Below, piece after piece: positions 25,800 through 52,721 of a stretch of DNA of 64,000 bases (its first letter is position 1; each line of letters begins with the position of its first letter). The notes beneath the pieces are model-generated. The model did no database searches. It saw only the letters and a program-made list of their open reading frames with translations, and was not told the origin of the DNA. The position numbers and the translations under genes are program-made. The stretch is from sequence record PQ898602.1, one strand, 5' to 3'.

Positions 25800-25843
25800 T
25801 ATAATAAATAACTAAAGGTTAAGGATCCCTGACTGAATAGGTA

Positions 25844-27136
25844 ATGAAAAGTTTCAGCAAGTTCTTCTCGGAAGCCAGAGAAACCAATGCGTCTGCAGAA
25901 GCCAAGAAACTTGGTTTAAAAGGTGATGGTCACGGAGGATGGTATAATAAACAGGGAGAGTTTGTCGCCAAAACAGAAGGCGGTGAACTCGTATTTTATG
26001 GAAAAGATAACAAACCAGGTGAGAAGGATGAACCTCATTCCTCTACACCTACTGGTCAAGCACAGGCTGCTGGAACAGAAGTAGGTGAGAGACCACAAGT
26101 AAATCCACAAGCATCCAGAGAAACTCCTGCACAGACAAGAGCGAAAGGAAATAAAGTAGTTGTCAATCCTGACGAAGAGGAAGAAGTAGTTGATGCACCA
26201 GAAGGTGAAGAGACTGAACTTGCACCTGGTGTTGTTGTAGTCTTCGGTAGATTCAATCCACCTACAATCGGTCACAAGAAACTTCTTGATAAGGCTGCTG
26301 CAGTTGCAAGAAAGAAAGGATTTGAACTGAGAATTTATCCTTCTCGTTCTCAGGATGCGAAGAAGAATCCTCTGACACCTGATATGAAGATCTCATACAT
26401 GCGTCAGATGTTCCCTGATTACATCGACAATATTATTGACGACAAGGGATCGAAGACTATCTTCAATGTACTAACTGGTGCAAACGAAGAGGGTCATACA
26501 AACATGACCATTATGGTTGGTGGTGACAGACTTAGTGAGTTCCAAGGTCTTGCACATAAGTACAACGGAGACCTTTATCAGTATGATGATCTTCAGGTAA
26601 TCTCTGCAGGTGATAGAGATCCTGATTCTGATGATGTTTCTGGAATGTCTGCATCGAAACTGCGTCTTGCTGCAGCAGAAGGAGATTTCAAAAAGTTTGC
26701 GAAGGGTGTACCCGACACTCTGAAGAACATGGAGAAGATGGAACTCTACAATGTTATTCGTAGATCGATGAACATTAGTGAAGAGACTGAAGTATGGGAA
26801 GTTGCACCTAAACTTGATGAAGAGGGAATGCGTGATGCATATCTAGTTGATGGTGTTTTTGCAGTTGGTGATATGGTAGAGAACGTTAATACTGGTCTGG
26901 TTGGTGAAGTAACTCGTAGAGGAACGAACTACATCATTGCAGTAACTGAAGCGGGTATGATGTTCAAGTCTTGGTTGAGAGATATCACAGAATTTAAGTA
27001 CTATGAAGTCGGTACTGATGCACAGAGAATTCATGCACAATCGATTACACCAGGTCAAGAAGTAAAAAGTTATACTGGTGTAAAGGTTCCTTCGATTTAC
27101 GACAGATTTAAGGCGGCTCTGAAAAAGAATAAATAA
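25844..27136 (+). CDS. HIGH-family nucleotidyltransferase (cytidylyltransferase/NMNAT-like) with capsid-targeting-like N-terminus
   Basis: MKSFSKFFSE leader; FGRFNPPTIGH, KNPL, VGGDR, SGMSASKLR; TAAATA at 25805. Confidence 0.75.
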   Translation: MKSFSKFFSEARETNASAEAKKLGLKGDGHGGWYNKQGEFVAKTEGGELVFYGKDNKPGEKDEPHSSTPTGQAQAAGTEVGERPQVNPQASRETPAQTRAKGNKVVVNPDEEEEVVDAPEGEETELAPGVVVVFGRFNPPTIGHKKLLDKAAAVARKKGFELRIYPSRSQDAKKNPLTPDMKISYMRQMFPDYIDNIIDDKGSKTIFNVLTGANEEGHTNMTIMVGGDRLSEFQGLAHKYNGDLYQYDDLQVISAGDRDPDSDDVSGMSASKLRLAAAEGDFKKFAKGVPDTLKNMEKMELYNVIRRSMNISEETEVWEVAPKLDEEGMRDAYLVDGVFAVGDMVENVNTGLVGEVTRRGTNYIIAVTEAGMMFKSWLRDITEFKYYEVGTDAQRIHAQSITPGQEVKSYTGVKVPSIYDRFKAALKKNK

Positions 27137-27164: not shown

Positions 27165-29612
27165 ATGTCTAGTTGGGAAAAATTCTCGAGCGAAATTGTA
27201 GAGGGTAAGAAAAAGCCTGCGTTAGATCCTGTTGGAAAAGAGGATGCTGACATTAATAATGATGGCAAAGAGGATGAGACCGATTCGTATCTAAGAAATC
27301 GCAGAAAGATTAGATCCAGAATCATTAGGAAAGAAGACTATGAAAACATCGAAGAAAAAGCCGTCTCAAAAGCCCAACAAAGATTCTTCGGGATGGTTAG
27401 AGCGGCTCAAAAGGGGGAAATGGAAGACCCCTCGCCTGAGGTTTCCAAAGCTGCAGCCTCCATGTCCAAGTCCGACGTAAAGGACTTTGCGAAGACAAAA
27501 CACGATAAACTACCAGAGAAGAAAGAAACAAAGGAGGAAACTTCTCTGGTAGGTGATATTGTAGAAAATCTTAGAGCACAGAGACTTGCAAGACAGGCTC
27601 AGAGACAAATTGCCCAAGATAAACAGGCTAGAAGAAAAACTGCCCGTCAAGGTCAAGACATGATTAATGATTTGGTTAGAGGACCAAATCCATCTAGAGG
27701 TAAATCTAAGAGAGTTGAAGTAAAGGCACCTGCAAATGTAAAAGGTGGTGCTAAGAAATCTTCTGACGAACCAGATCTGGATACTGTATCAGGAAGAGCA
27801 GAAGAACGTCGTAGAGCCTCTAAAACATCTGCAGAACTGCGTAGACAGGAAGACAGAACTAAAAGATCTGGATTAGCTGCTCAACTCCGAGGAGAAAGAA
27901 CAAGAAAGAAAGAAGCAGAGACCGCTGCTGCAGAACGTCGTGCGGGTCGTGATGCTGCCGCTAGAGAGAATGAAGTAAAGAGAGCTAAAGAACTTAAGAG
28001 TGCTAAAATTGATGCTAAGTCTAAACAGGACTCTGCATTTATGGATACACTGAAGAAGGAGGTCGGTGATGGTCTTGATAGAGCTGGTTCTAGAGCTGCT
28101 GTCAAGAAAGATGATACTGGTGGACAGGCACTTAGGAATCTCGAAGTTGGTGGTGATTTAATTGGTGGTCTCGCAAAGGGTCTTGTTGGTGGTGCTATGG
28201 CCAAACGTAAGGCCAAAAAAGACAGATTGGATGATCTCAAGAAACGACGTGAGGTTGATAAGGCAGGTCGTGCTGCGGGCAAACGTTTTGATATGGGTAA
28301 AAAAGCTGAAGCGGATGCGAAAGCAGACATGGAAAAGGATAAGGATGATAACCTTAAAAAATTCCTAAACCAAAAACCACCCAAATCAGTCACTGATCCT
28401 TATAAGGATGGTAAAGGTCGTTCGGATGTTGTCAAAGCTGGTGGTATTGGTGCTCAAGGTTCTGTAAGATCCAAAGGTGGATCTATGGGTGCTGATGGCC
28501 CTAAGGGTACTGCAATTCCTGGAACTACACCTAAACCAGCATTAGCTCCATCTAAACCAAATACACCTCCTGTAAGTGGTGGCGCGAGAAACCTTCTTTC
28601 TCCTGCTCAAGCTATGTCCAAACCAAAGAAAAAATTCTCTTCTAGAGGAGAAGCACTCAGAAAGAATCCGAGTATGAGAGCTAAAGTAGCAAGAGAGTTG
28701 GGTATGGGTAGTGCTAAGAAAGAAAAACCAAAAGGTTTTAAAGAAGGATTCTCTAATTGGAGAGTTGAGCTCAACGAGGGTTTCTTCTTACAAGAGGTTG
28801 AGGATGTTGAGAACAATGGTCTCCACTCCAACATTAAAAAACTTGTTGACATCTCTAAGAAGAAAAACAAGATTGAGATCAATCCTGCACTAGGTGAAGG
28901 TGCGCTTCCTGTAAAACCCATCGTTGGTAGTTTTGCACAAGGTGAAGCGGGAAAAGGTGATTCCAACAGAACCATGGGTGATGTTGCGAAACGTAGAATC
29001 AGAAGAAAACTAGTTGACTGGGCATCCCAGAAAGCTGGTGAGAAAGCTGAGGATATCGTTAAGAACATCCTTGATAAAAAGAAGGAAGGTGAAGAAGTTA
29101 AAGAGGGGTGGTCGGACAAGTATAAAAAGTCTATTGATTGCGATAACCCCAAAGGGTTTAGTCAGAAAGCACATTGTGCAGGTAAGAAGAAAGAAGTCAA
29201 GGAAGCATTTAAAGATGGTGAGATGAAACCCCAACTCAAAAAGAAGAAGGGTAACATCCAAGTAGTTGATACTGGTAACACTTTAAAGAAGTCTGTTGAC
29301 AATCAGATCAATACCGATCCTGACCTAACCTTAATCAAGAAAAAGTTGAAAGAAGATTGGCAAAAAGTCAATCGCAAGGACAAGACAGATGGTCTGAGTC
29401 AGAAAGCAGTTGATGCGTATCGTAAAGAGAACCCAGGTTCAAAGTTACAAACTGCAGTAACTGAAAAGAAACCAACTGGTAAGAGAGCAGATCGTCGAAA
29501 GTCCTTCTGCCGTCGCATGAAGGGGATGAAAGCAAAACTGACATCCAAGAAAACTTCAAGAGATCCTGATTCCAGAATCAACAAAGCTCTTCGTCGTTGG
29601 AATTGCAACTGA
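27165..29612 (+). CDS. Large modular basic late protein; putative internal-head polyprotein
   Basis: TAAATA at 27130; modules bounded by [ILV]-x-E; includes Cys-containing C-terminal modules. Confidence 0.75.
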   Translation: MSSWEKFSSEIVEGKKKPALDPVGKEDADINNDGKEDETDSYLRNRRKIRSRIIRKEDYENIEEKAVSKAQQRFFGMVRAAQKGEMEDPSPEVSKAAASMSKSDVKDFAKTKHDKLPEKKETKEETSLVGDIVENLRAQRLARQAQRQIAQDKQARRKTARQGQDMINDLVRGPNPSRGKSKRVEVKAPANVKGGAKKSSDEPDLDTVSGRAEERRRASKTSAELRRQEDRTKRSGLAAQLRGERTRKKEAETAAAERRAGRDAAARENEVKRAKELKSAKIDAKSKQDSAFMDTLKKEVGDGLDRAGSRAAVKKDDTGGQALRNLEVGGDLIGGLAKGLVGGAMAKRKAKKDRLDDLKKRREVDKAGRAAGKRFDMGKKAEADAKADMEKDKDDNLKKFLNQKPPKSVTDPYKDGKGRSDVVKAGGIGAQGSVRSKGGSMGADGPKGTAIPGTTPKPALAPSKPNTPPVSGGARNLLSPAQAMSKPKKKFSSRGEALRKNPSMRAKVARELGMGSAKKEKPKGFKEGFSNWRVELNEGFFLQEVEDVENNGLHSNIKKLVDISKKKNKIEINPALGEGALPVKPIVGSFAQGEAGKGDSNRTMGDVAKRRIRRKLVDWASQKAGEKAEDIVKNILDKKKEGEEVKEGWSDKYKKSIDCDNPKGFSQKAHCAGKKKEVKEAFKDGEMKPQLKKKKGNIQVVDTGNTLKKSVDNQINTDPDLTLIKKKLKEDWQKVNRKDKTDGLSQKAVDAYRKENPGSKLQTAVTEKKPTGKRADRRKSFCRRMKGMKAKLTSKKTSRDPDSRINKALRRWNCN

Positions 29613-49718: not shown

Positions 49719-52633
49719 CAGATTCCTCCTGTATAGTTAATGTTCCACTTAGATGTAATTACACCAGACTGACCCGATTCTGGGGTAAATCTGATATCAA
49801 CGTTACTTCCAACGACTGCTGCGTCGATAGACAAGATTTGATTTGGTGAGTACATAATTGCATACTCTTGGGAATATGCAGTGGTACCATCATGCATAAC
49901 GAGAAGTTTCTGAACTTGTCTTTGAGTTCCAAGTCCACAAGTGAAGGTATACTCTGCACTTGCATGGTCACTTAGTGCAAAACTATGTACGGTATATGCA
50001 ACACCTGCAGATGCAGTAGTTGTATTAACACCAGTTTGACCTTGTGCAGTGACTGTTACAACTCCTGCAGAAATGTCAGAACATGTGAGACCAATACCGA
50101 AGTTGATCGTTCCTGCAGTTCCTCTACTTACTCCACTATCAGAAACAGTTACACCTGCACCTGCTCCAGTAACACCAGTAAGTCCACCACCATCACCAGA
50201 GAATGAAGTCGCAGTTAGAACACCAGTGACAACTGCACCAGAAGTGTTTGCTTGGACTCTTACCGTATCTCCATCATCCTTAATACTTGTTCCTGCACCA
50301 ACACTGATTCCCGTAAGTGCGGAACCATCGATTGCAGGGAGAGCACCTGTTAAGTTTGCAGCAGGTAAACTTGTAAGGTTTGCGCCACTTCCATGGAAAG
50401 TACCAGAGAAGTTTGACGCATATAGGTAGTTAGTTCCTGGGTTGAATCTAAGTCCACCATTATCAACCATCAACTTGCTGTAGGAGTTACCTGCACCAGA
50501 GTTGTCCATCATGATGACATTGTAATTTACATTGTCATCAATAGATTCTTCAATTCTAATTCCACCATTGAAATTAGATGCAGTAACGATACCAGAACCA
50601 CCAACTTCAATACCACCTGCGGTCATGGTTACTCCGAACCCTGAACCATTTGCACCAACGTTAAGTTGACCTCTGAAGTTTGATGCGGTTCCGTTGCCGA
50701 ATACGTCAATACCATATTGGTAATAGACACCAGCTGTAGAAGTAAAGTAAACGAGGTTCTGATCGAAGTAAACGTATTGACCAGAAGGAGCTCTCAAGGA
50801 TAGAGTACCACTGGTACTCTCAACAACGTTTGTACTGAACTTGAGGTCCGCAACAGAAGCAACACCAGAAACTTGAATGTCACCTTCGACTGATAGATCT
50901 ACAGTTGGTCGGGTAGAACCAATACCAACTTTTCTTCCTGTGGTGAAGATACCTGCGAGTGCTCCATCAGAGACTGCCCAGGTTCCACCTGCACCAGGTA
51001 GAGATCCACTTGCACCTTGTAGACCCTGGAAACCTGCACCAGTTTCACCTTGAATACCTTGGAAACCATCTTGACCAAGAATGCCCTGTGTGCCTTGTAC
51101 GCCCTGCAGACCTTGTAGACCCTGAGTACCTTGTGCAGCAATATCAGATGCGTCTGCACCTTGAATACCTAAGATACCTTGAGTACCTTGCGCTGCTTGT
51201 GTACCTTGCAGACCCTGGAGGCCTTGGGTTCCTTGAACGCCCTGAAGTCCTTGCAAACCTTGAGTGCCTTGGACACCTTGGGTTCCTTGAACGCCTTGTG
51301 TTCCCTGAGCTCCCTGAATGCCCTGGAGTCCTTGTACGCCCTGAATGCCCTGGAGTCCTTGTACGCCCTGAATGCCCTGTGCTCCAGTTGTTCCCTGAAG
51401 ACCAGTTGCACCCTGTGGACCTTTGATCAGACCAACATCCGACCAAGTAGTTGCTCCAAATGTCCAGAGACGACCAGTGTCATCTGCGATAACACCATTA
51501 CCTGCAACAGGTGGATACCAAACGTAACCAGTATCGTCTGCGGTCAACGTTGTAGCACCAACACCTTGTGTATTGGATGGAATGTTACCGACAATGGTTA
51601 CCGAGGTTCCGTCTTCACCTTCAGTACCCTGTACGCCCTGAGGACCCTGTAGTCCCTGTACGCCTTGAACACCCTGAACGCCTTGGGTACCCTGGATACC
51701 TTGGGTTCCTTGCGCTGCCTGGGTGCCTTGGAGACCTTGTACGCCTTGAGTACCTTGGAATCCGTATGGTCCTTGAGTACCTTGGGATGCTTGTGTGCCC
51801 TGTAGACCTTGAACGCCTTGGAATCCGTATGGACCTTGAGTTCCATCTGTACCTTGAGAACCAGTTACAAGTTCTCCATTTGACCAGAACTGGGATGCAG
51901 TAATAATGCCAGTGGTATTAACGTAGGAATCAGTTGTAAGAGTCTTTGCTACATCTGCTAGGGAGGATACACCTGCGAGAGGAGTGTAGTATGCGAGTCT
52001 TGCTGCATCTACGATAGTTGTGATTCCAGTAACTGTTGCGATACCACCTGCAACTGTTACACCAAGATTTTCATTAAAGTCGATCTTGGAGAATTCACCG
52101 AGGATTACGTTATCATTTCTTAATTCGATACTTCCGATGCCAGCTGCGACTGTTCCACCGCCACTGACTACTGAAGTTGTTAGGGAAATAAGGACACGAC
52201 CTGCACCATCGGGATCACCTAATGTGAGTCCGTTACCGAAGTTGAGTTCTTTTGCAATACCTTTTCTAACCGAGTCGTCTAGAATCTCAACACCAGAGTT
52301 GGTTGCAACTACGTTTTCGAGTTGACTACCATCACCGAAGAATTGTGTTGCGGTAATGACACCTGTTGCGGTGATGTTCCTGACTTCGAGGTGTTCTGCG
52401 GTTGCTACTCCAGCAACGACTGCACCTGTTGTGTTGATAATCGGATTCCCAGTCAGGTTCTCTGCGACTGTTGAAATACCCGCACTATCTACATAACTTT
52501 CTAGATCATCTCCATCCCCAAAGGTATCGTAGAGTTCTTGAAAGTTACTATTAATTTTACCCATTGCAGAACGCAATGAATCACCAGTACCATCATTAGC
52601 GCTACTGCCTGTATTGATACCCAGTCTAGACAT
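49718..52633 (-). CDS. Tail-fibre-like protein with collagen-like G-X-Q repeats
   Basis: N-terminal NDGTGDSLR anchor; long QGxQG tracts; C-terminal LLVMHDGTTAY domain. Confidence 0.8.
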   Translation of the reverse strand: MSRLGINTGSSANDGTGDSLRSAMGKINSNFQELYDTFGDGDDLESYVDSAGISTVAENLTGNPIINTTGAVVAGVATAEHLEVRNITATGVITATQFFGDGSQLENVVATNSGVEILDDSVRKGIAKELNFGNGLTLGDPDGAGRVLISLTTSVVSGGGTVAAGIGSIELRNDNVILGEFSKIDFNENLGVTVAGGIATVTGITTIVDAARLAYYTPLAGVSSLADVAKTLTTDSYVNTTGIITASQFWSNGELVTGSQGTDGTQGPYGFQGVQGLQGTQASQGTQGPYGFQGTQGVQGLQGTQAAQGTQGIQGTQGVQGVQGVQGLQGPQGVQGTEGEDGTSVTIVGNIPSNTQGVGATTLTADDTGYVWYPPVAGNGVIADDTGRLWTFGATTWSDVGLIKGPQGATGLQGTTGAQGIQGVQGLQGIQGVQGLQGIQGAQGTQGVQGTQGVQGTQGLQGLQGVQGTQGLQGLQGTQAAQGTQGILGIQGADASDIAAQGTQGLQGLQGVQGTQGILGQDGFQGIQGETGAGFQGLQGASGSLPGAGGTWAVSDGALAGIFTTGRKVGIGSTRPTVDLSVEGDIQVSGVASVADLKFSTNVVESTSGTLSLRAPSGQYVYFDQNLVYFTSTAGVYYQYGIDVFGNGTASNFRGQLNVGANGSGFGVTMTAGGIEVGGSGIVTASNFNGGIRIEESIDDNVNYNVIMMDNSGAGNSYSKLMVDNGGLRFNPGTNYLYASNFSGTFHGSGANLTSLPAANLTGALPAIDGSALTGISVGAGTSIKDDGDTVRVQANTSGAVVTGVLTATSFSGDGGGLTGVTGAGAGVTVSDSGVSRGTAGTINFGIGLTCSDISAGVVTVTAQGQTGVNTTTASAGVAYTVHSFALSDHASAEYTFTCGLGTQRQVQKLLVMHDGTTAYSQEYAIMYSPNQILSIDAAVVGSNVDIRFTPESGQSGVITSKWNINYTGGI
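51020..51860 (-). repeat. Collagen-like 9-bp-period repeats incl. exact 27-bp tandem (51312-51379, about 2.5 copies)
   Basis: ccctgaatgccctggagtccttgtacg repeated. Confidence 0.9.
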
Positions 52634-52663: not shown

Positions 52664-52721
52664 TATTTATCGTTTCCCAGAATCGGTTATTTATTATATC
52701 AGATGTTGGCAATAATAAATA
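52664..52721. promoter_or_regulatory. Divergent late promoters
   Basis: Minus TAAATA at 52664-52669 and 52688-52693; plus TAAATA at 52716-52721. Confidence 0.65.

What the first reader, a model, noticed from the sequence alone, without database searches (positions are those of the whole stretch)
27165..29612. Second modular polyprotein with capsid-targeting-like leader and discrete folded modules
Seen: N-terminus MSSWEKFSSEIVE| and boundaries ENIEE|KAV, GDIVE|NLR, VELNE|GFF, ALGE|GAL, EEVKE|GWS, KEVKE|AFK, KKLKE|DWQ. Modules include KAVSKAQQRFFGMV...KHDKLPEKK, a small Cys pair module GWSDKYKKSIDCDNPKGFSQKAHC and a C-terminal basic module ending RKSFCRRM...ALRRWNC. Late promoter at 27130. Inference: same processing logic as the 52749 protein, so the phage may encode a family of multi-cargo precursors.
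Basis: partly seen in the sequence, partly recalled or inferred. Interest (0 to 1): 0.75.

Follow-up and report, generated by a model that had tools for sequence, protein, structure and literature searches.

The report
Capsid-targeted modular precursor protein of a cyanophage
A 815-residue late gene of the T4-like cyanophage S-SCSM2R looks like a precursor that is carried into the phage head by a T4-type targeting leader and cut by the head protease into several small basic proteins, which would extend T4's internal-protein system to abundant ocean viruses; the cutting itself is inferred, not shown.

Summary
The window is Synechococcus phage S-SCSM2R, a 244-kb T4-like cyanomyovirus, and the gene is annotated hypothetical.

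The raw count of [ILV]xE motifs is not above chance (11 against 8.2). Their placement is:
- They are conserved at module junctions in 27 orthologues.
- They are nearly absent from the fast-evolving 400-residue basic core (2 seen, about 38 expected, over 12 orthologues).
- They are enriched just before seven unrelated small modules in other phages.

The modules (DUF3008, a two-Cys mini-module, DUF6321) occur alone, in other orders and as swappable cassettes. When alone they start exactly at the predicted junctions, or carry leaders nearly identical to the T4 internal-protein targeting sequence.

The neighbouring cytidylyltransferase gene has the same leader, and its family is repeatedly found in cyanophage virions. 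In S-SM1, proteins sharing ORF176's first 48 residues or its DUF6321 end were also found in virions.

Most likely this is a capsid-targeted, protease-processed multi-module internal head protein precursor. Processing and the function of the modules are inferred only. One listed boundary (LNE|GFF) is weakly conserved. This phage's own shallow virion proteome does not name the protein.

The parts
27128..27135 (+). Late-promoter-like motif AATAAATA (NATAAATA type), 29 nt upstream of the ATG
   Evidence: consensus from PMC2984593
27165..29612 (+). ORF176 (SSCSM2R_176), 815 aa, 90 kDa, pI 10.0: the proposed capsid-targeted modular precursor
27165..27203 (+). Residues 1-13: CTS-like leader (W4, F7, IVE at 11-13). 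Nearly invariant (one variable position) in 12 close orthologues; M[AS]SWE[EK]FS..[IV]xE in 15 distant ones
   Evidence: T4 CTS rules from PMC9026906
27204..27356 (+). Residues 14-64: acidic/neutral segment with an EF-hand/dockerin-like DxNxDG loop, ending in IEE|K. Residues 1-48 are shared with the S-SM1 virion protein SSM1_191
   Evidence: (Dockerin_1, E 0.022, below cut-off)
27357..27518 (+). Residues 65-118: DUF3008 module, predicted three-helix bundle. It is preceded by [ILV]xE|K in 33 of 36 distinct contexts
27519..27566 (+). Residues 119-134: linker 'TKEE.SLV..I.E', ending in a conserved [ILV]xE (one-residue shift in distant orthologues); predicted disordered
27567..28778 (+). Residues 135-538: fast-evolving Lys/Arg/Ala-rich low-complexity core (net charge +47, pI 10.5). 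No [ILV]xE in residues 135-535 (the segment ends in LNE 536-538); the motif is avoided in all orthologues
28779..28898 (+). Residues 539-578: conserved small module between LNE|G / FLQE|V and LGE|G
28899..29105 (+). Residues 579-647: module nearly invariant in close orthologues, ending in EEVKE|G
29106..29204 (+). Residues 648-680: two-Cys mini-module (WSxKYKxSIxC...HC). Stand-alone copies start 'MGW' or follow a T4-like leader
29205..29354 (+). Residues 681-730: basic linker. Together with the two-Cys module it forms a cassette that is absent (P0005, P0008, P0013) or replaced (P0014-16) exactly between the two [VL]KE junctions
29355..29609 (+). Residues 731-815: DUF6321 module (net +18, helical, two conserved Cys)
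25844..27136 (+). Neighbour ORF175, an NMNAT/cytidylyltransferase-like enzyme with the same kind of leader (MKSFSKFFSE) and its own AATAAATA motif at 25803-25810. Its family (T4-GC190) has been detected in cyanophage virions

Best explanation
ORF176 is a late-expressed precursor of internal head proteins, built on the logic of the T4 internal proteins. Proposed steps: (1) The 13-residue N-terminal leader (aromatic residue at position 4, Phe at 7, then I-V-E) targets the 90-kDa precursor to the gp22 scaffolding core while the prohead assembles. (2) The gp21-type prohead protease (ORF127) cuts after Glu in [ILVM]-x-E at the leader and at the junctions between modules. (3) This releases a small acidic piece that leaves the head, and several basic products that stay with the DNA: DUF3008 (about 6-8 kDa), a 43-kDa segment with net charge +47, two to three small modules, the two-Cys mini-module and DUF6321 (10 kDa, +18). 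These products are probably ejected into the host with the DNA. Shown: the anatomy, the conservation and avoidance of the motif, the independence of the modules, and the virion location of relatives. Inferred: targeting, cleavage, retention and ejection. What the released modules do in the cell is unknown; charge neutralisation of DNA and/or host take-over or counter-defence is a guess by analogy with T4 IPI.
For: Leader. T4 ipII/ipIII begin MKTYQEFIAE|A and ipI begins MKTFKEF (read from NC_000866). In T4, positions 4 and 7 carry targeting, positions 8 and 10 carry processing, and the cleavage motif is L/I-x-E (PMC9026906). Stand-alone relatives of ORF176's modules carry leaders such as MKTFKEF..IEE|KAV-DUF3008, MKTFKQFQE|DW.., MKTFSQFITE|A and MKTFKSFVAE|A. 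160 ORFs in the fetched loci start M..[FWY]..[FL], against about 29 expected.

Protease context. The phage has gp21, gp22 and gp23. Its scaffold gp22 is enriched in [ILV]xE (23 against 14.8, p = 0.009). Three of the four sites in gp23 lie in the first 53 residues.

Junctions. [ILV]xE ends within 8 residues before the start of seven unrelated module types in 48-100% of distinct contexts, against a 12% background (p from 7e-3 to 6e-27). In 15 distant orthologues the leader, pre-DUF3008, post-DUF3008, F[IL]xE|V and [LM]xE|G sites are each conserved 16/16.

Avoidance. The variable 400-residue core has 2 sites against 37.6 expected over 12 orthologues.

Cassettes. Residues 648-728 are deleted or replaced exactly between the two [VL]KE junctions. 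Module order differs between proteins.

Structure. AF2 gives folded helical DUF3008 and DUF6321 with low-confidence flanks.

Virion evidence in relatives. In S-SM1, all of the following were detected by MS in purified virions: SSM1_115 (T4-GC119, DUF6321 end 57% identical), SSM1_190 (cytidylyltransferase with leader MKKFSAFLNE|A), SSM1_191 (shares ORF176 residues 1-48) and SSM1_192 (MLSFKELQE|K) (PMC3037559). NMNAT-like proteins recur in virion proteomes (PMC9602691). An S-SCSM1 DUF6321 protein is named 'Virion protein'.

Timing. A late-promoter-like motif lies upstream.
Against: No cleavage product or neo-N-terminus has been observed for this protein or any relative. The overall motif count is at chance level. 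Some junction residues (KED before DUF6321, EK[AS][VL] before DUF3008) are conserved together with the module and could belong to it. [ILV]xE motifs also lie inside conserved modules (LPE 116-118, VTE 765-767). The P3 residue before DUF6321 is hydrophobic in only about 70% of contexts. DUF6321 also occurs as a roughly 90-residue stand-alone protein without a leader in podoviruses, a group that, from general knowledge and not checked here, lacks a gp21-type protease; so the domain's function does not depend on this pathway. The S-SCSM2R virion proteome (23 proteins) names neither ORF175 nor ORF176; at best ORF176 is the single unnamed protein of unknown function (PMC12801897). The virion-detected S-SM1 relatives SSM1_115 and SSM1_191 have no clear MK.F..F leader. 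Orthologues are not phylogenetically independent, so the p-values are upper-bound impressions.
Confidence: 0.55

Rival explanations
1. The protein is packaged into the head through the leader, but only the leader (and perhaps the acidic N-terminal piece) is removed. The internal [ILVM]xE motifs would be relics of the leaders of formerly separate genes that became fused, or hinge or capping residues of the modules. The mature product would be one long basic internal protein.
For: Adjacent small leader-bearing genes and fused versions both exist; for example L003 has a 51-aa leader plus two-Cys ORF directly upstream of a DUF6321 ORF. KED and EK[AS][VL] travel with their modules. T4 internal proteins and Alt are trimmed only at their ends (PMC9026906).
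Against: Only the [ILVM]xE part of the leaders is kept at internal junctions; the F..F part is not. The motif is conserved 16/16 at five junctions where the flanks diverge. It is strongly avoided in the long core, which is hard to explain unless internal sites are exposed to a protease.
Confidence: 0.2
2. The protein is not a virion component. It would be a late, intrinsically disordered basic protein that acts in the infected cell (for example DNA condensation, a packaging aid, or a nucleoid or RNA binder). The N-terminal motif would serve another purpose.
For: Composition: pI 10, a 400-residue Lys/Arg/Ala-rich core. The gene sits among replication and metabolic genes. It is not named in the S-SCSM2R virion proteome. 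DUF6321 occurs in phages without gp21.
Against: Relatives sharing its N-terminal segment or its C-terminal domain, and the leader-bearing neighbour family, are found in purified virions of other cyanophages. The leader matches the experimentally defined T4 CTS. In a T7-like cyanophage DUF6321 lies between the capsid and tail-tube genes.
Confidence: 0.12
3. It is a virion protein located outside the head interior (neck, tail, baseplate or surface). Its Cys-pair mini-modules would be disulfide-stabilised extracellular domains.
For: Paired Cys in the mini-module and in DUF6321. Paralogous mosaic proteins (T4-GC119, ORF117) lie between gp15/gp16 and gp17, next to neck and tail genes. Virion MS does not give a location.
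Against: The CTS-like leader and the protease-motif logic point to the prohead core. Extreme positive charge and disorder fit DNA contact better than a surface structure. There is no similarity to known tail or fibre folds.
Confidence: 0.08

Closest known systems
Phage T4 internal proteins IPI, IPII, IPIII (and Alt) with the capsid targeting sequence, processed by gp21
   Same: T4-like phage with gp21, gp22 and gp23. A short N-terminal leader with an aromatic residue at position 4 and Phe/Leu at 7, ending in [ILV]xE; relatives carry MKTF.[EQ]F leaders nearly identical to T4's. Basic products. Gene outside the head-gene cluster, with a late promoter. Hypervariable, non-homologous cargo behind a common leader.
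   Different: T4 internal proteins are single small proteins (8-20 kDa) cut once. Here a 90-kDa precursor strings up to eight segments joined by putative sites, with cassette gain, loss and swapping at those sites. There is no sequence similarity beyond the leader. Targeting and cleavage are untested.
Inner-body / ejection proteins of giant phages phiKZ, 201phi2-1 and SPN3US, processed by gp21-like proteases
   Same: Many head-internal proteins cut after Glu in a three-residue motif, with redundant sites. Products are associated with DNA and ejected (PMC9026906).
   Different: The motif there is S/A-x-E rather than [ILVM]-x-E. Those proteins lose propeptides rather than being arrays of exchangeable mini-modules. 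No homology was found.
Cyanophage virion protein families T4-GC119 and T4-GC190 (Sullivan et al. 2010) and the virion-associated NMNAT of S-SCSM1
   Same: T4-GC119 (S-SM1 gp115) is a mosaic protein ending in DUF6321, like ORF176. T4-GC190 is the leader-bearing cytidylyltransferase encoded next to ORF176. Both were detected in virions.
   Different: The two papers read here list them only as 'structural' or 'virion-associated' proteins of unknown role, and a phrase search found no cyanophage paper mentioning a capsid targeting sequence. ORF176 shares only the terminal domain with GC119 and has a different N-terminus.
Pfam DUF6321 and DUF3008
   Same: ORF176 contains one copy of each, above the Pfam thresholds.
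   Different: They are names without a function. There is no solved structure or fold relative.

Membership tests
T4-type CTS-bearing internal head proteins | Encoded by a phage with a gp21-type prohead protease and a gp22 scaffolding core | tested here: met
   ORF127 matches phrog_207 (head maturation protease, E 9e-83). gp22 and gp23 are annotated next to it.
T4-type CTS-bearing internal head proteins | N-terminal leader of 10-19 residues with targeting determinants at positions 4 and 7 | tested here: met
   ORF176 has W4 and F7. T4 ipII/III have Y4 and F7; ipI has F4 and F7. The rule is from PMC9026906. The leader is nearly invariant (one variable position) in 12 close orthologues and conserved in 15 distant ones. 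This is similarity only, not a functional test.
T4-type CTS-bearing internal head proteins | Leader ends in the gp21 motif L/I-x-E | tested here: met
   I11-V12-E13, conserved as [IV]xE in 16/16 and 12/12 orthologues.
T4-type CTS-bearing internal head proteins | Late expression together with head assembly | tested here: inconclusive
   A NATAAATA-type motif lies 29 nt upstream. No transcript data were examined.
T4-type CTS-bearing internal head proteins | Physically inside the head, with the leader removed by the protease | not testable with these tools
   Indirect only: relatives were detected in S-SM1 and S-SCSM1 virions. The protein is not named in the S-SCSM2R proteome.
T4-type CTS-bearing internal head proteins | Small single mature protein (8-20 kDa) | tested here: not met
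   The precursor is 90 kDa with up to eight segments. This is the main departure from the family.
Pfam DUF6321 (PF19846) | HMM score above the gathering cut-off of 28.5 bits | tested here: met
   56.2 bits in the whole protein, 63 bits for the excised domain.
Pfam DUF3008 (PF11450) | HMM score above the gathering cut-off of 24 bits | tested here: met
   22.5 bits in the whole protein (below the cut-off), but 29.6 bits for residues 66-135 alone.
Cyanophage T4-GC119 virion protein cluster | Mosaic protein ending in DUF6321, detected in virions | tested here: inconclusive
   The C-terminal 84 residues are 57% identical to S-SM1 gp115. The rest is unrelated. Cluster membership as defined in the paper was not recomputed.
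phiKZ-type inner body proteins | S/A-x-E cleavage motif and homology to inner-body protein families | tested here: not met
   The junction motif is [ILVM]xE. There were no PHROG, Pfam or fold matches to such proteins.

The most novel reading that the evidence does not exclude
T4-like cyanophages (and related marine phages) keep a combinatorial library of small capsid-delivered proteins. The modules would be exchanged as cassettes by recombination at short protease-site junctions, expressed either singly behind a T4-type leader or as multi-cargo polyproteins. The head protease would release them and they would be injected with the DNA to act on the host: counter-defence, metabolic take-over (as with the co-packaged NMNAT-like enzyme) or DNA protection. 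This would be a phage counterpart of polymorphic effector systems.
Probability: 0.3. Interest if true: 0.85.

Novelty: new variant of a known kind. Interest (0 to 1): 0.68.

Why it matters
If the leader and the junction motifs work as in T4, four things follow. (1) Capsid targeting by a roughly 10-residue leader is conserved from coliphage T4 to marine cyanophages. (2) This explains why an NMNAT/cytidylyltransferase-like enzyme and several 'hypothetical' proteins keep turning up in cyanophage virion proteomes. (3) A simple sequence rule (leader plus [ILVM]xE junctions) would predict the injected protein repertoire of some of the most abundant viruses in the sea. (4) It gives a handle for packaging foreign proteins into cyanophage heads. 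The multi-cargo precursor with cassette exchange at protease sites would be a new way for a phage to diversify what it injects.

Tried and rejected
- Simple motif counting does not support the finding: 11 [ILV]xE against 8.2 expected, p = 0.19.
- Sequence search of the PDB found nothing.
- Foldseek of the DUF6321 and DUF3008 models against the PDB gave nothing below E = 7. BFVD returned only other DUF6321 proteins.
- NCBIfam had no family for ORF176, ORF205 or ORF117. Pfam on ORF117, ORF205 and the middle segments found nothing.
- A literature search for DUF6321 or DUF3008 found 0 papers. A search for 'capsid targeting sequence' together with 'cyanophage' found only a T4 review.
- The S-SCSM2R paper holds no supplement as text, so the identity of its one unknown virion protein could not be read.
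- A search meant to locate the S-SCSM1 'Virion protein' gene did not return that phage.
- The P-SCSP1u cryo-EM paper says nothing about the DUF6321 gene.
- A genome-wide scan of S-SCSM2R for the strict leader found only ORF175 and ORF176, so in this phage the leader family is small.
- The weak Dockerin/EF-hand match (E 0.022) is below threshold and is not used as evidence.
- The idea that the ORF is a fusion or assembly artefact was rejected: full-length orthologues of 54-95% identity exist on many independent contigs.
Full report
IDENTITY AND OBSERVATION

The window is part of Synechococcus phage S-SCSM2R (PQ898602.1, 244 kb, host WH7803). Window position plus 124000 gives the record position. 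The finding is gene SSCSM2R_176, annotated 'hypothetical protein'.

The ORF 27165-29612 (+) encodes 815 residues (90 kDa, pI 10.0). It starts at the first start codon after an in-frame stop.

Pfam finds DUF6321 at residues 738-812. It finds DUF3008 at 66-120, above its cut-off once the segment is scored alone. Twelve PHROG families of very different lengths (91 to 928 residues) match one or other end of the protein. That already suggested a mosaic build.

IS THE MOTIF MORE THAN CHANCE?

By count it is not: 11 [ILV]xE motifs against 8.2 +/- 2.6 in shuffles (p = 0.19). By position it is. Four independent lines show this.

First, conservation in distant orthologues. I aligned 15 orthologues from IMG/VR (770-1110 residues, 36-48% identical, all beginning M-A-S-W-E-E-F-S-R-I-V-A-E). 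Five sites are each kept in 16 of 16 sequences, although the flanks and even the spacing change by hundreds of residues:
- the leader site;
- the site before DUF3008;
- the site after DUF3008 (shifted by one residue);
- F[IL]xE|V (ORF176 542-544);
- [LM]xE|G (576-578).

Second, avoidance in closer orthologues. In 12 orthologues from metagenomes (63-91% identical overall) the terminal modules are almost invariant. The central 400 residues have diverged into at least three versions with many indels. Yet that region carries 2 [ILV]xE motifs in total where composition predicts 37.6. Avoidance of a three-residue motif in a fast-evolving segment, together with its retention at junctions, is what a protease recognition site would produce.

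Third, cassette behaviour. In the same alignment, residues 648-728 (the two-Cys module plus its linker) are missing in three orthologues. They are replaced by an unrelated sequence in three others. In each case the change lies exactly between EEVKE| and [LV]KE|DWQ.

Fourth, enrichment before unrelated modules. I defined seven module types by short conserved motifs and collected them from 144 distinct proteins. An [ILV]xE ends within the eight residues before the module in 48-100% of distinct upstream contexts. The background is 12% (binomial p from 7e-3 to 6e-27).

The sequences are related to each other, so these p-values overstate independence. The direction is consistent in all four tests.

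MODULES ARE INDEPENDENT UNITS

It is not met.
- The two-Cys module occurs as the very N-terminus of other proteins ('M-G-W-S-E-K-Y-K-K...'). No alternative upstream start exists there.
- The same module also occurs behind short leaders (MKTFKQFQE|DW..., MRAYEFINE|EW...).
- DUF3008 occurs alone as 'MSAKSKAQQRFF...', or behind MKTFKEFINYGRIEE|KAV.
- DUF6321 occurs alone behind MKINEIVKE|DWQKVN, MKTFSQFITE|A or MKTFKSFVAE|A. It can be internal, and it can precede the two-Cys module instead of following it.

AlphaFold2 with family alignments gives compact helical folds for DUF3008 (pLDDT 85-88 over residues 69-110) and DUF6321 (pLDDT 82-91). The flanks and the linker have low confidence. The middle 400 residues are a low-complexity basic segment (net +47), not a folded module.

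THE LEADER

I read the T4 internal-protein genes from the T4 record. ipII and ipIII begin MKTYQEFIAE|A, and ipI begins MKTFKEF....

In T4 the first 10 residues suffice for packaging. Positions 4 and 7 matter for targeting, positions 8 and 10 for processing, and gp21 cuts after L/I-x-E (PMC9026906).

ORF176 has W4, F7 and I11-V12-E13, and all three are invariant in its orthologues. The adjacent gene ORF175 (25844-27136, NMNAT/cytidylyltransferase-like) begins MKSFSKFFSE. Its orthologues begin MKKFTDFLTE|A, MKSFFQFLSE|A and MKKFSAFLNE|A.

In the fetched marine loci, 160 distinct ORFs start M..[FWY]..[FL], against about 29 expected. Most have [ILVF]xE ending at residue 9, 10 or 13. In S-SCSM2R itself only ORF175 and ORF176 fit the strict pattern.

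THE PROTEASE CONTEXT

S-SCSM2R encodes the portal, a gp21-type protease (phrog_207, E 9e-83), the gp22 scaffold and gp23.
- Its gp22 is enriched in [ILV]xE (23 against 14.8, p = 0.009).
- So is gp21 itself (11 against 5.5).
- Three of the four sites in gp23 fall in the first 53 residues, with FLGE|AAP the likely maturation site.

This fits a T4-like specificity in this phage.

TIMING

AATAAATA at 27128-27135 matches the cyanomyovirus late-promoter consensus NATAAATA (PMC2984593). Six of the 12 plus-strand ATAAATA sites in the window lie 28-40 nt before a long ORF start: 24642, 25844, 27165, 33585, 52749 and 54549 (P about 1e-8).

VIRION EVIDENCE FROM RELATIVES

In the S-SM1 virion proteome (Sullivan et al. 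2010, PMC3037559, Table S8) these proteins were detected:

| Cluster | Description | Peptide counts |
|---|---|---|
| T4-GC190 | cytidylyltransferase | 25 |
| T4-GC119 | hypothetical, 276-2985 bp in different phages | 13 |
| GC1454 | - | 10 |
| GC1455 | - | 7 |

I fetched these genes and checked each one.
- SSM1_115 (GC119) is a mosaic protein. Its Cys-containing modules each follow an [ILV]xE, and it ends in DUF6321 (79.6 bits; 57% identical to ORF176 732-814).
- SSM1_190 begins MKKFSAFLNE|A.
- SSM1_191 (GC1454), directly downstream of the cytidylyltransferase as ORF176 is, shares ORF176 residues 1-48 (52% identity). It also shares a module of the 52749 protein (49% identity, E 3e-12).
- SSM1_192 begins MLSFKELQE|K.

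The S-SCSM1 paper reports NMNAT in the virion and notes its recurrence in other cyanophage proteomes (PMC9602691). A DUF6321 protein of that phage is named 'Virion protein'.

Against this, the S-SCSM2R proteome lists only 23 proteins. It names neither ORF175 nor ORF176; one detected protein of unknown function is not identified (PMC12801897).

WHAT REMAINS INFERRED

Nobody has shown cleavage of any of these proteins. Several points weaken the case.
- Parts of the junctions (KED before DUF6321, EK[AS][VL] before DUF3008) are conserved with the modules and might belong to them.
- [ILV]xE also lies inside DUF3008 (LPE) and DUF6321 (VTE).
- DUF6321 also exists as a roughly 90-residue leaderless protein in podoviruses. 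In the T7-like P-SCSP1q it lies between the capsid and tail-tube genes. The domain's activity therefore does not depend on a gp21 pathway.
- No fold or sequence relative with known function was found for any module.

MECHANISM PROPOSED

1. Late transcription produces the precursor.
2. The leader mediates co-assembly with the gp22 core.
3. gp21 cuts at the leader and at the junctions.
4. The leader and the acidic piece leave the head.
5. The basic products stay with the DNA and enter the host at infection.

I put 0.55 on this. I put 0.2 on packaging with trimming of the leader only, about 0.12 on a non-virion cytoplasmic role, and 0.08 on a location outside the head.

COMPARISON WITH KNOWN SYSTEMS AND NOVELTY

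It works like the T4 CTS/internal-protein system and meets the testable sequence criteria of that family. It fails the 'small single protein' criterion, and it is untested for the defining physical properties.

The two cyanophage virion-proteome papers I read list these families only as structural or virion-associated proteins of unknown role. A phrase search found no cyanophage paper mentioning a capsid targeting sequence. I did not find the leader, the protease-site junctions, the motif avoidance or the cassette exchange described in the searchable literature. Absence from this library is not proof of novelty.

I rate it a new variant of a known kind.

Noticed in passing
window 25844-27136 (ORF175): An NMNAT/cytidylyltransferase-like enzyme carries a T4-CTS-like leader (MKSFSKFFSE) and its own AATAAATA motif at 25803-25810. 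Its family (T4-GC190) is repeatedly found in cyanophage virion proteomes. The leader offers an explanation for why an enzyme is packaged.
   Followed up: partly
It shares a 'GYKEID..RRAGNLSR' module (49% identity, E 3e-12) with the S-SM1 virion protein SSM1_191, which also shares ORF176's N-terminal 48 residues.
   Followed up: partly
PQ898602.1 105478-107652 (ORF117, outside the window; L185:5478-7652): A third mosaic protein (724 aa) lies between the terminase genes gp16 and gp17. It is made of Cys-rich mini-modules (CWKGYE, DACYHKVK, SLRDWF and YYC types), each preceded by [ILV]xE. It is the positional counterpart of the virion protein family T4-GC119.
   Followed up: partly
window 28755-28778 (residues 531-538) and relatives: A junction motif S-N-W-R-[EQV]-[ED]-L-x-E recurs immediately before different modules in different proteins (SNWRVELNE here; SNWREELKED before DUF6321; SNWRQDLDE before CWKGYE in ORF117). 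It may be an extended recognition or linker element.
   Followed up: no
window 27243-27284 (residues 27-40): There is an EF-hand/dockerin-like loop D-x-N-x-D-G-x-x-D-x-x-D followed by YL.NRRK. It is duplicated in the distant orthologues and present in the S-SM1 virion protein SSM1_191. The Pfam Dockerin_1 match is only at E 0.022, and calcium binding is unproven.
   Followed up: no
window 29106-29348 versus metagenomic orthologues P0005, P0008, P0013, P0014-16: There is a presence/absence/replacement polymorphism of an 81-residue cassette (648-728), bounded by the repeated [VL]KE junctions, among otherwise 63-91% identical proteins.
   Followed up: yes
L192 (Prochlorococcus phage P-SCSP1q) 4959-5213; L191 (Pelagibacter phage HTVC010P) 4947-5228: DUF6321 exists as a small leaderless basic protein in podoviruses. 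In the T7-like cyanophage it lies between the major capsid protein and tail tubular protein genes.
   Followed up: partly
window 24612, 33545, 54521 (+) and 52664-52670 (-): Further NATAAATA-type motifs lie 28-40 nt upstream of ORF starts: 24642, 33585 and 54549, and on the minus strand the 971-aa FhaB-like gene that starts at 52633. These mark a set of late genes scattered through a replication/metabolism region.
   Followed up: partly
L042, L004, L036, L037, L007 (about 25-35 nt upstream of the 'MGW' starts): A conserved TTCTAAATAATAA element precedes the stand-alone two-Cys/DUF6321 genes in IMG/VR contigs. It is probably a variant late promoter (CTAAATA).
   Followed up: no
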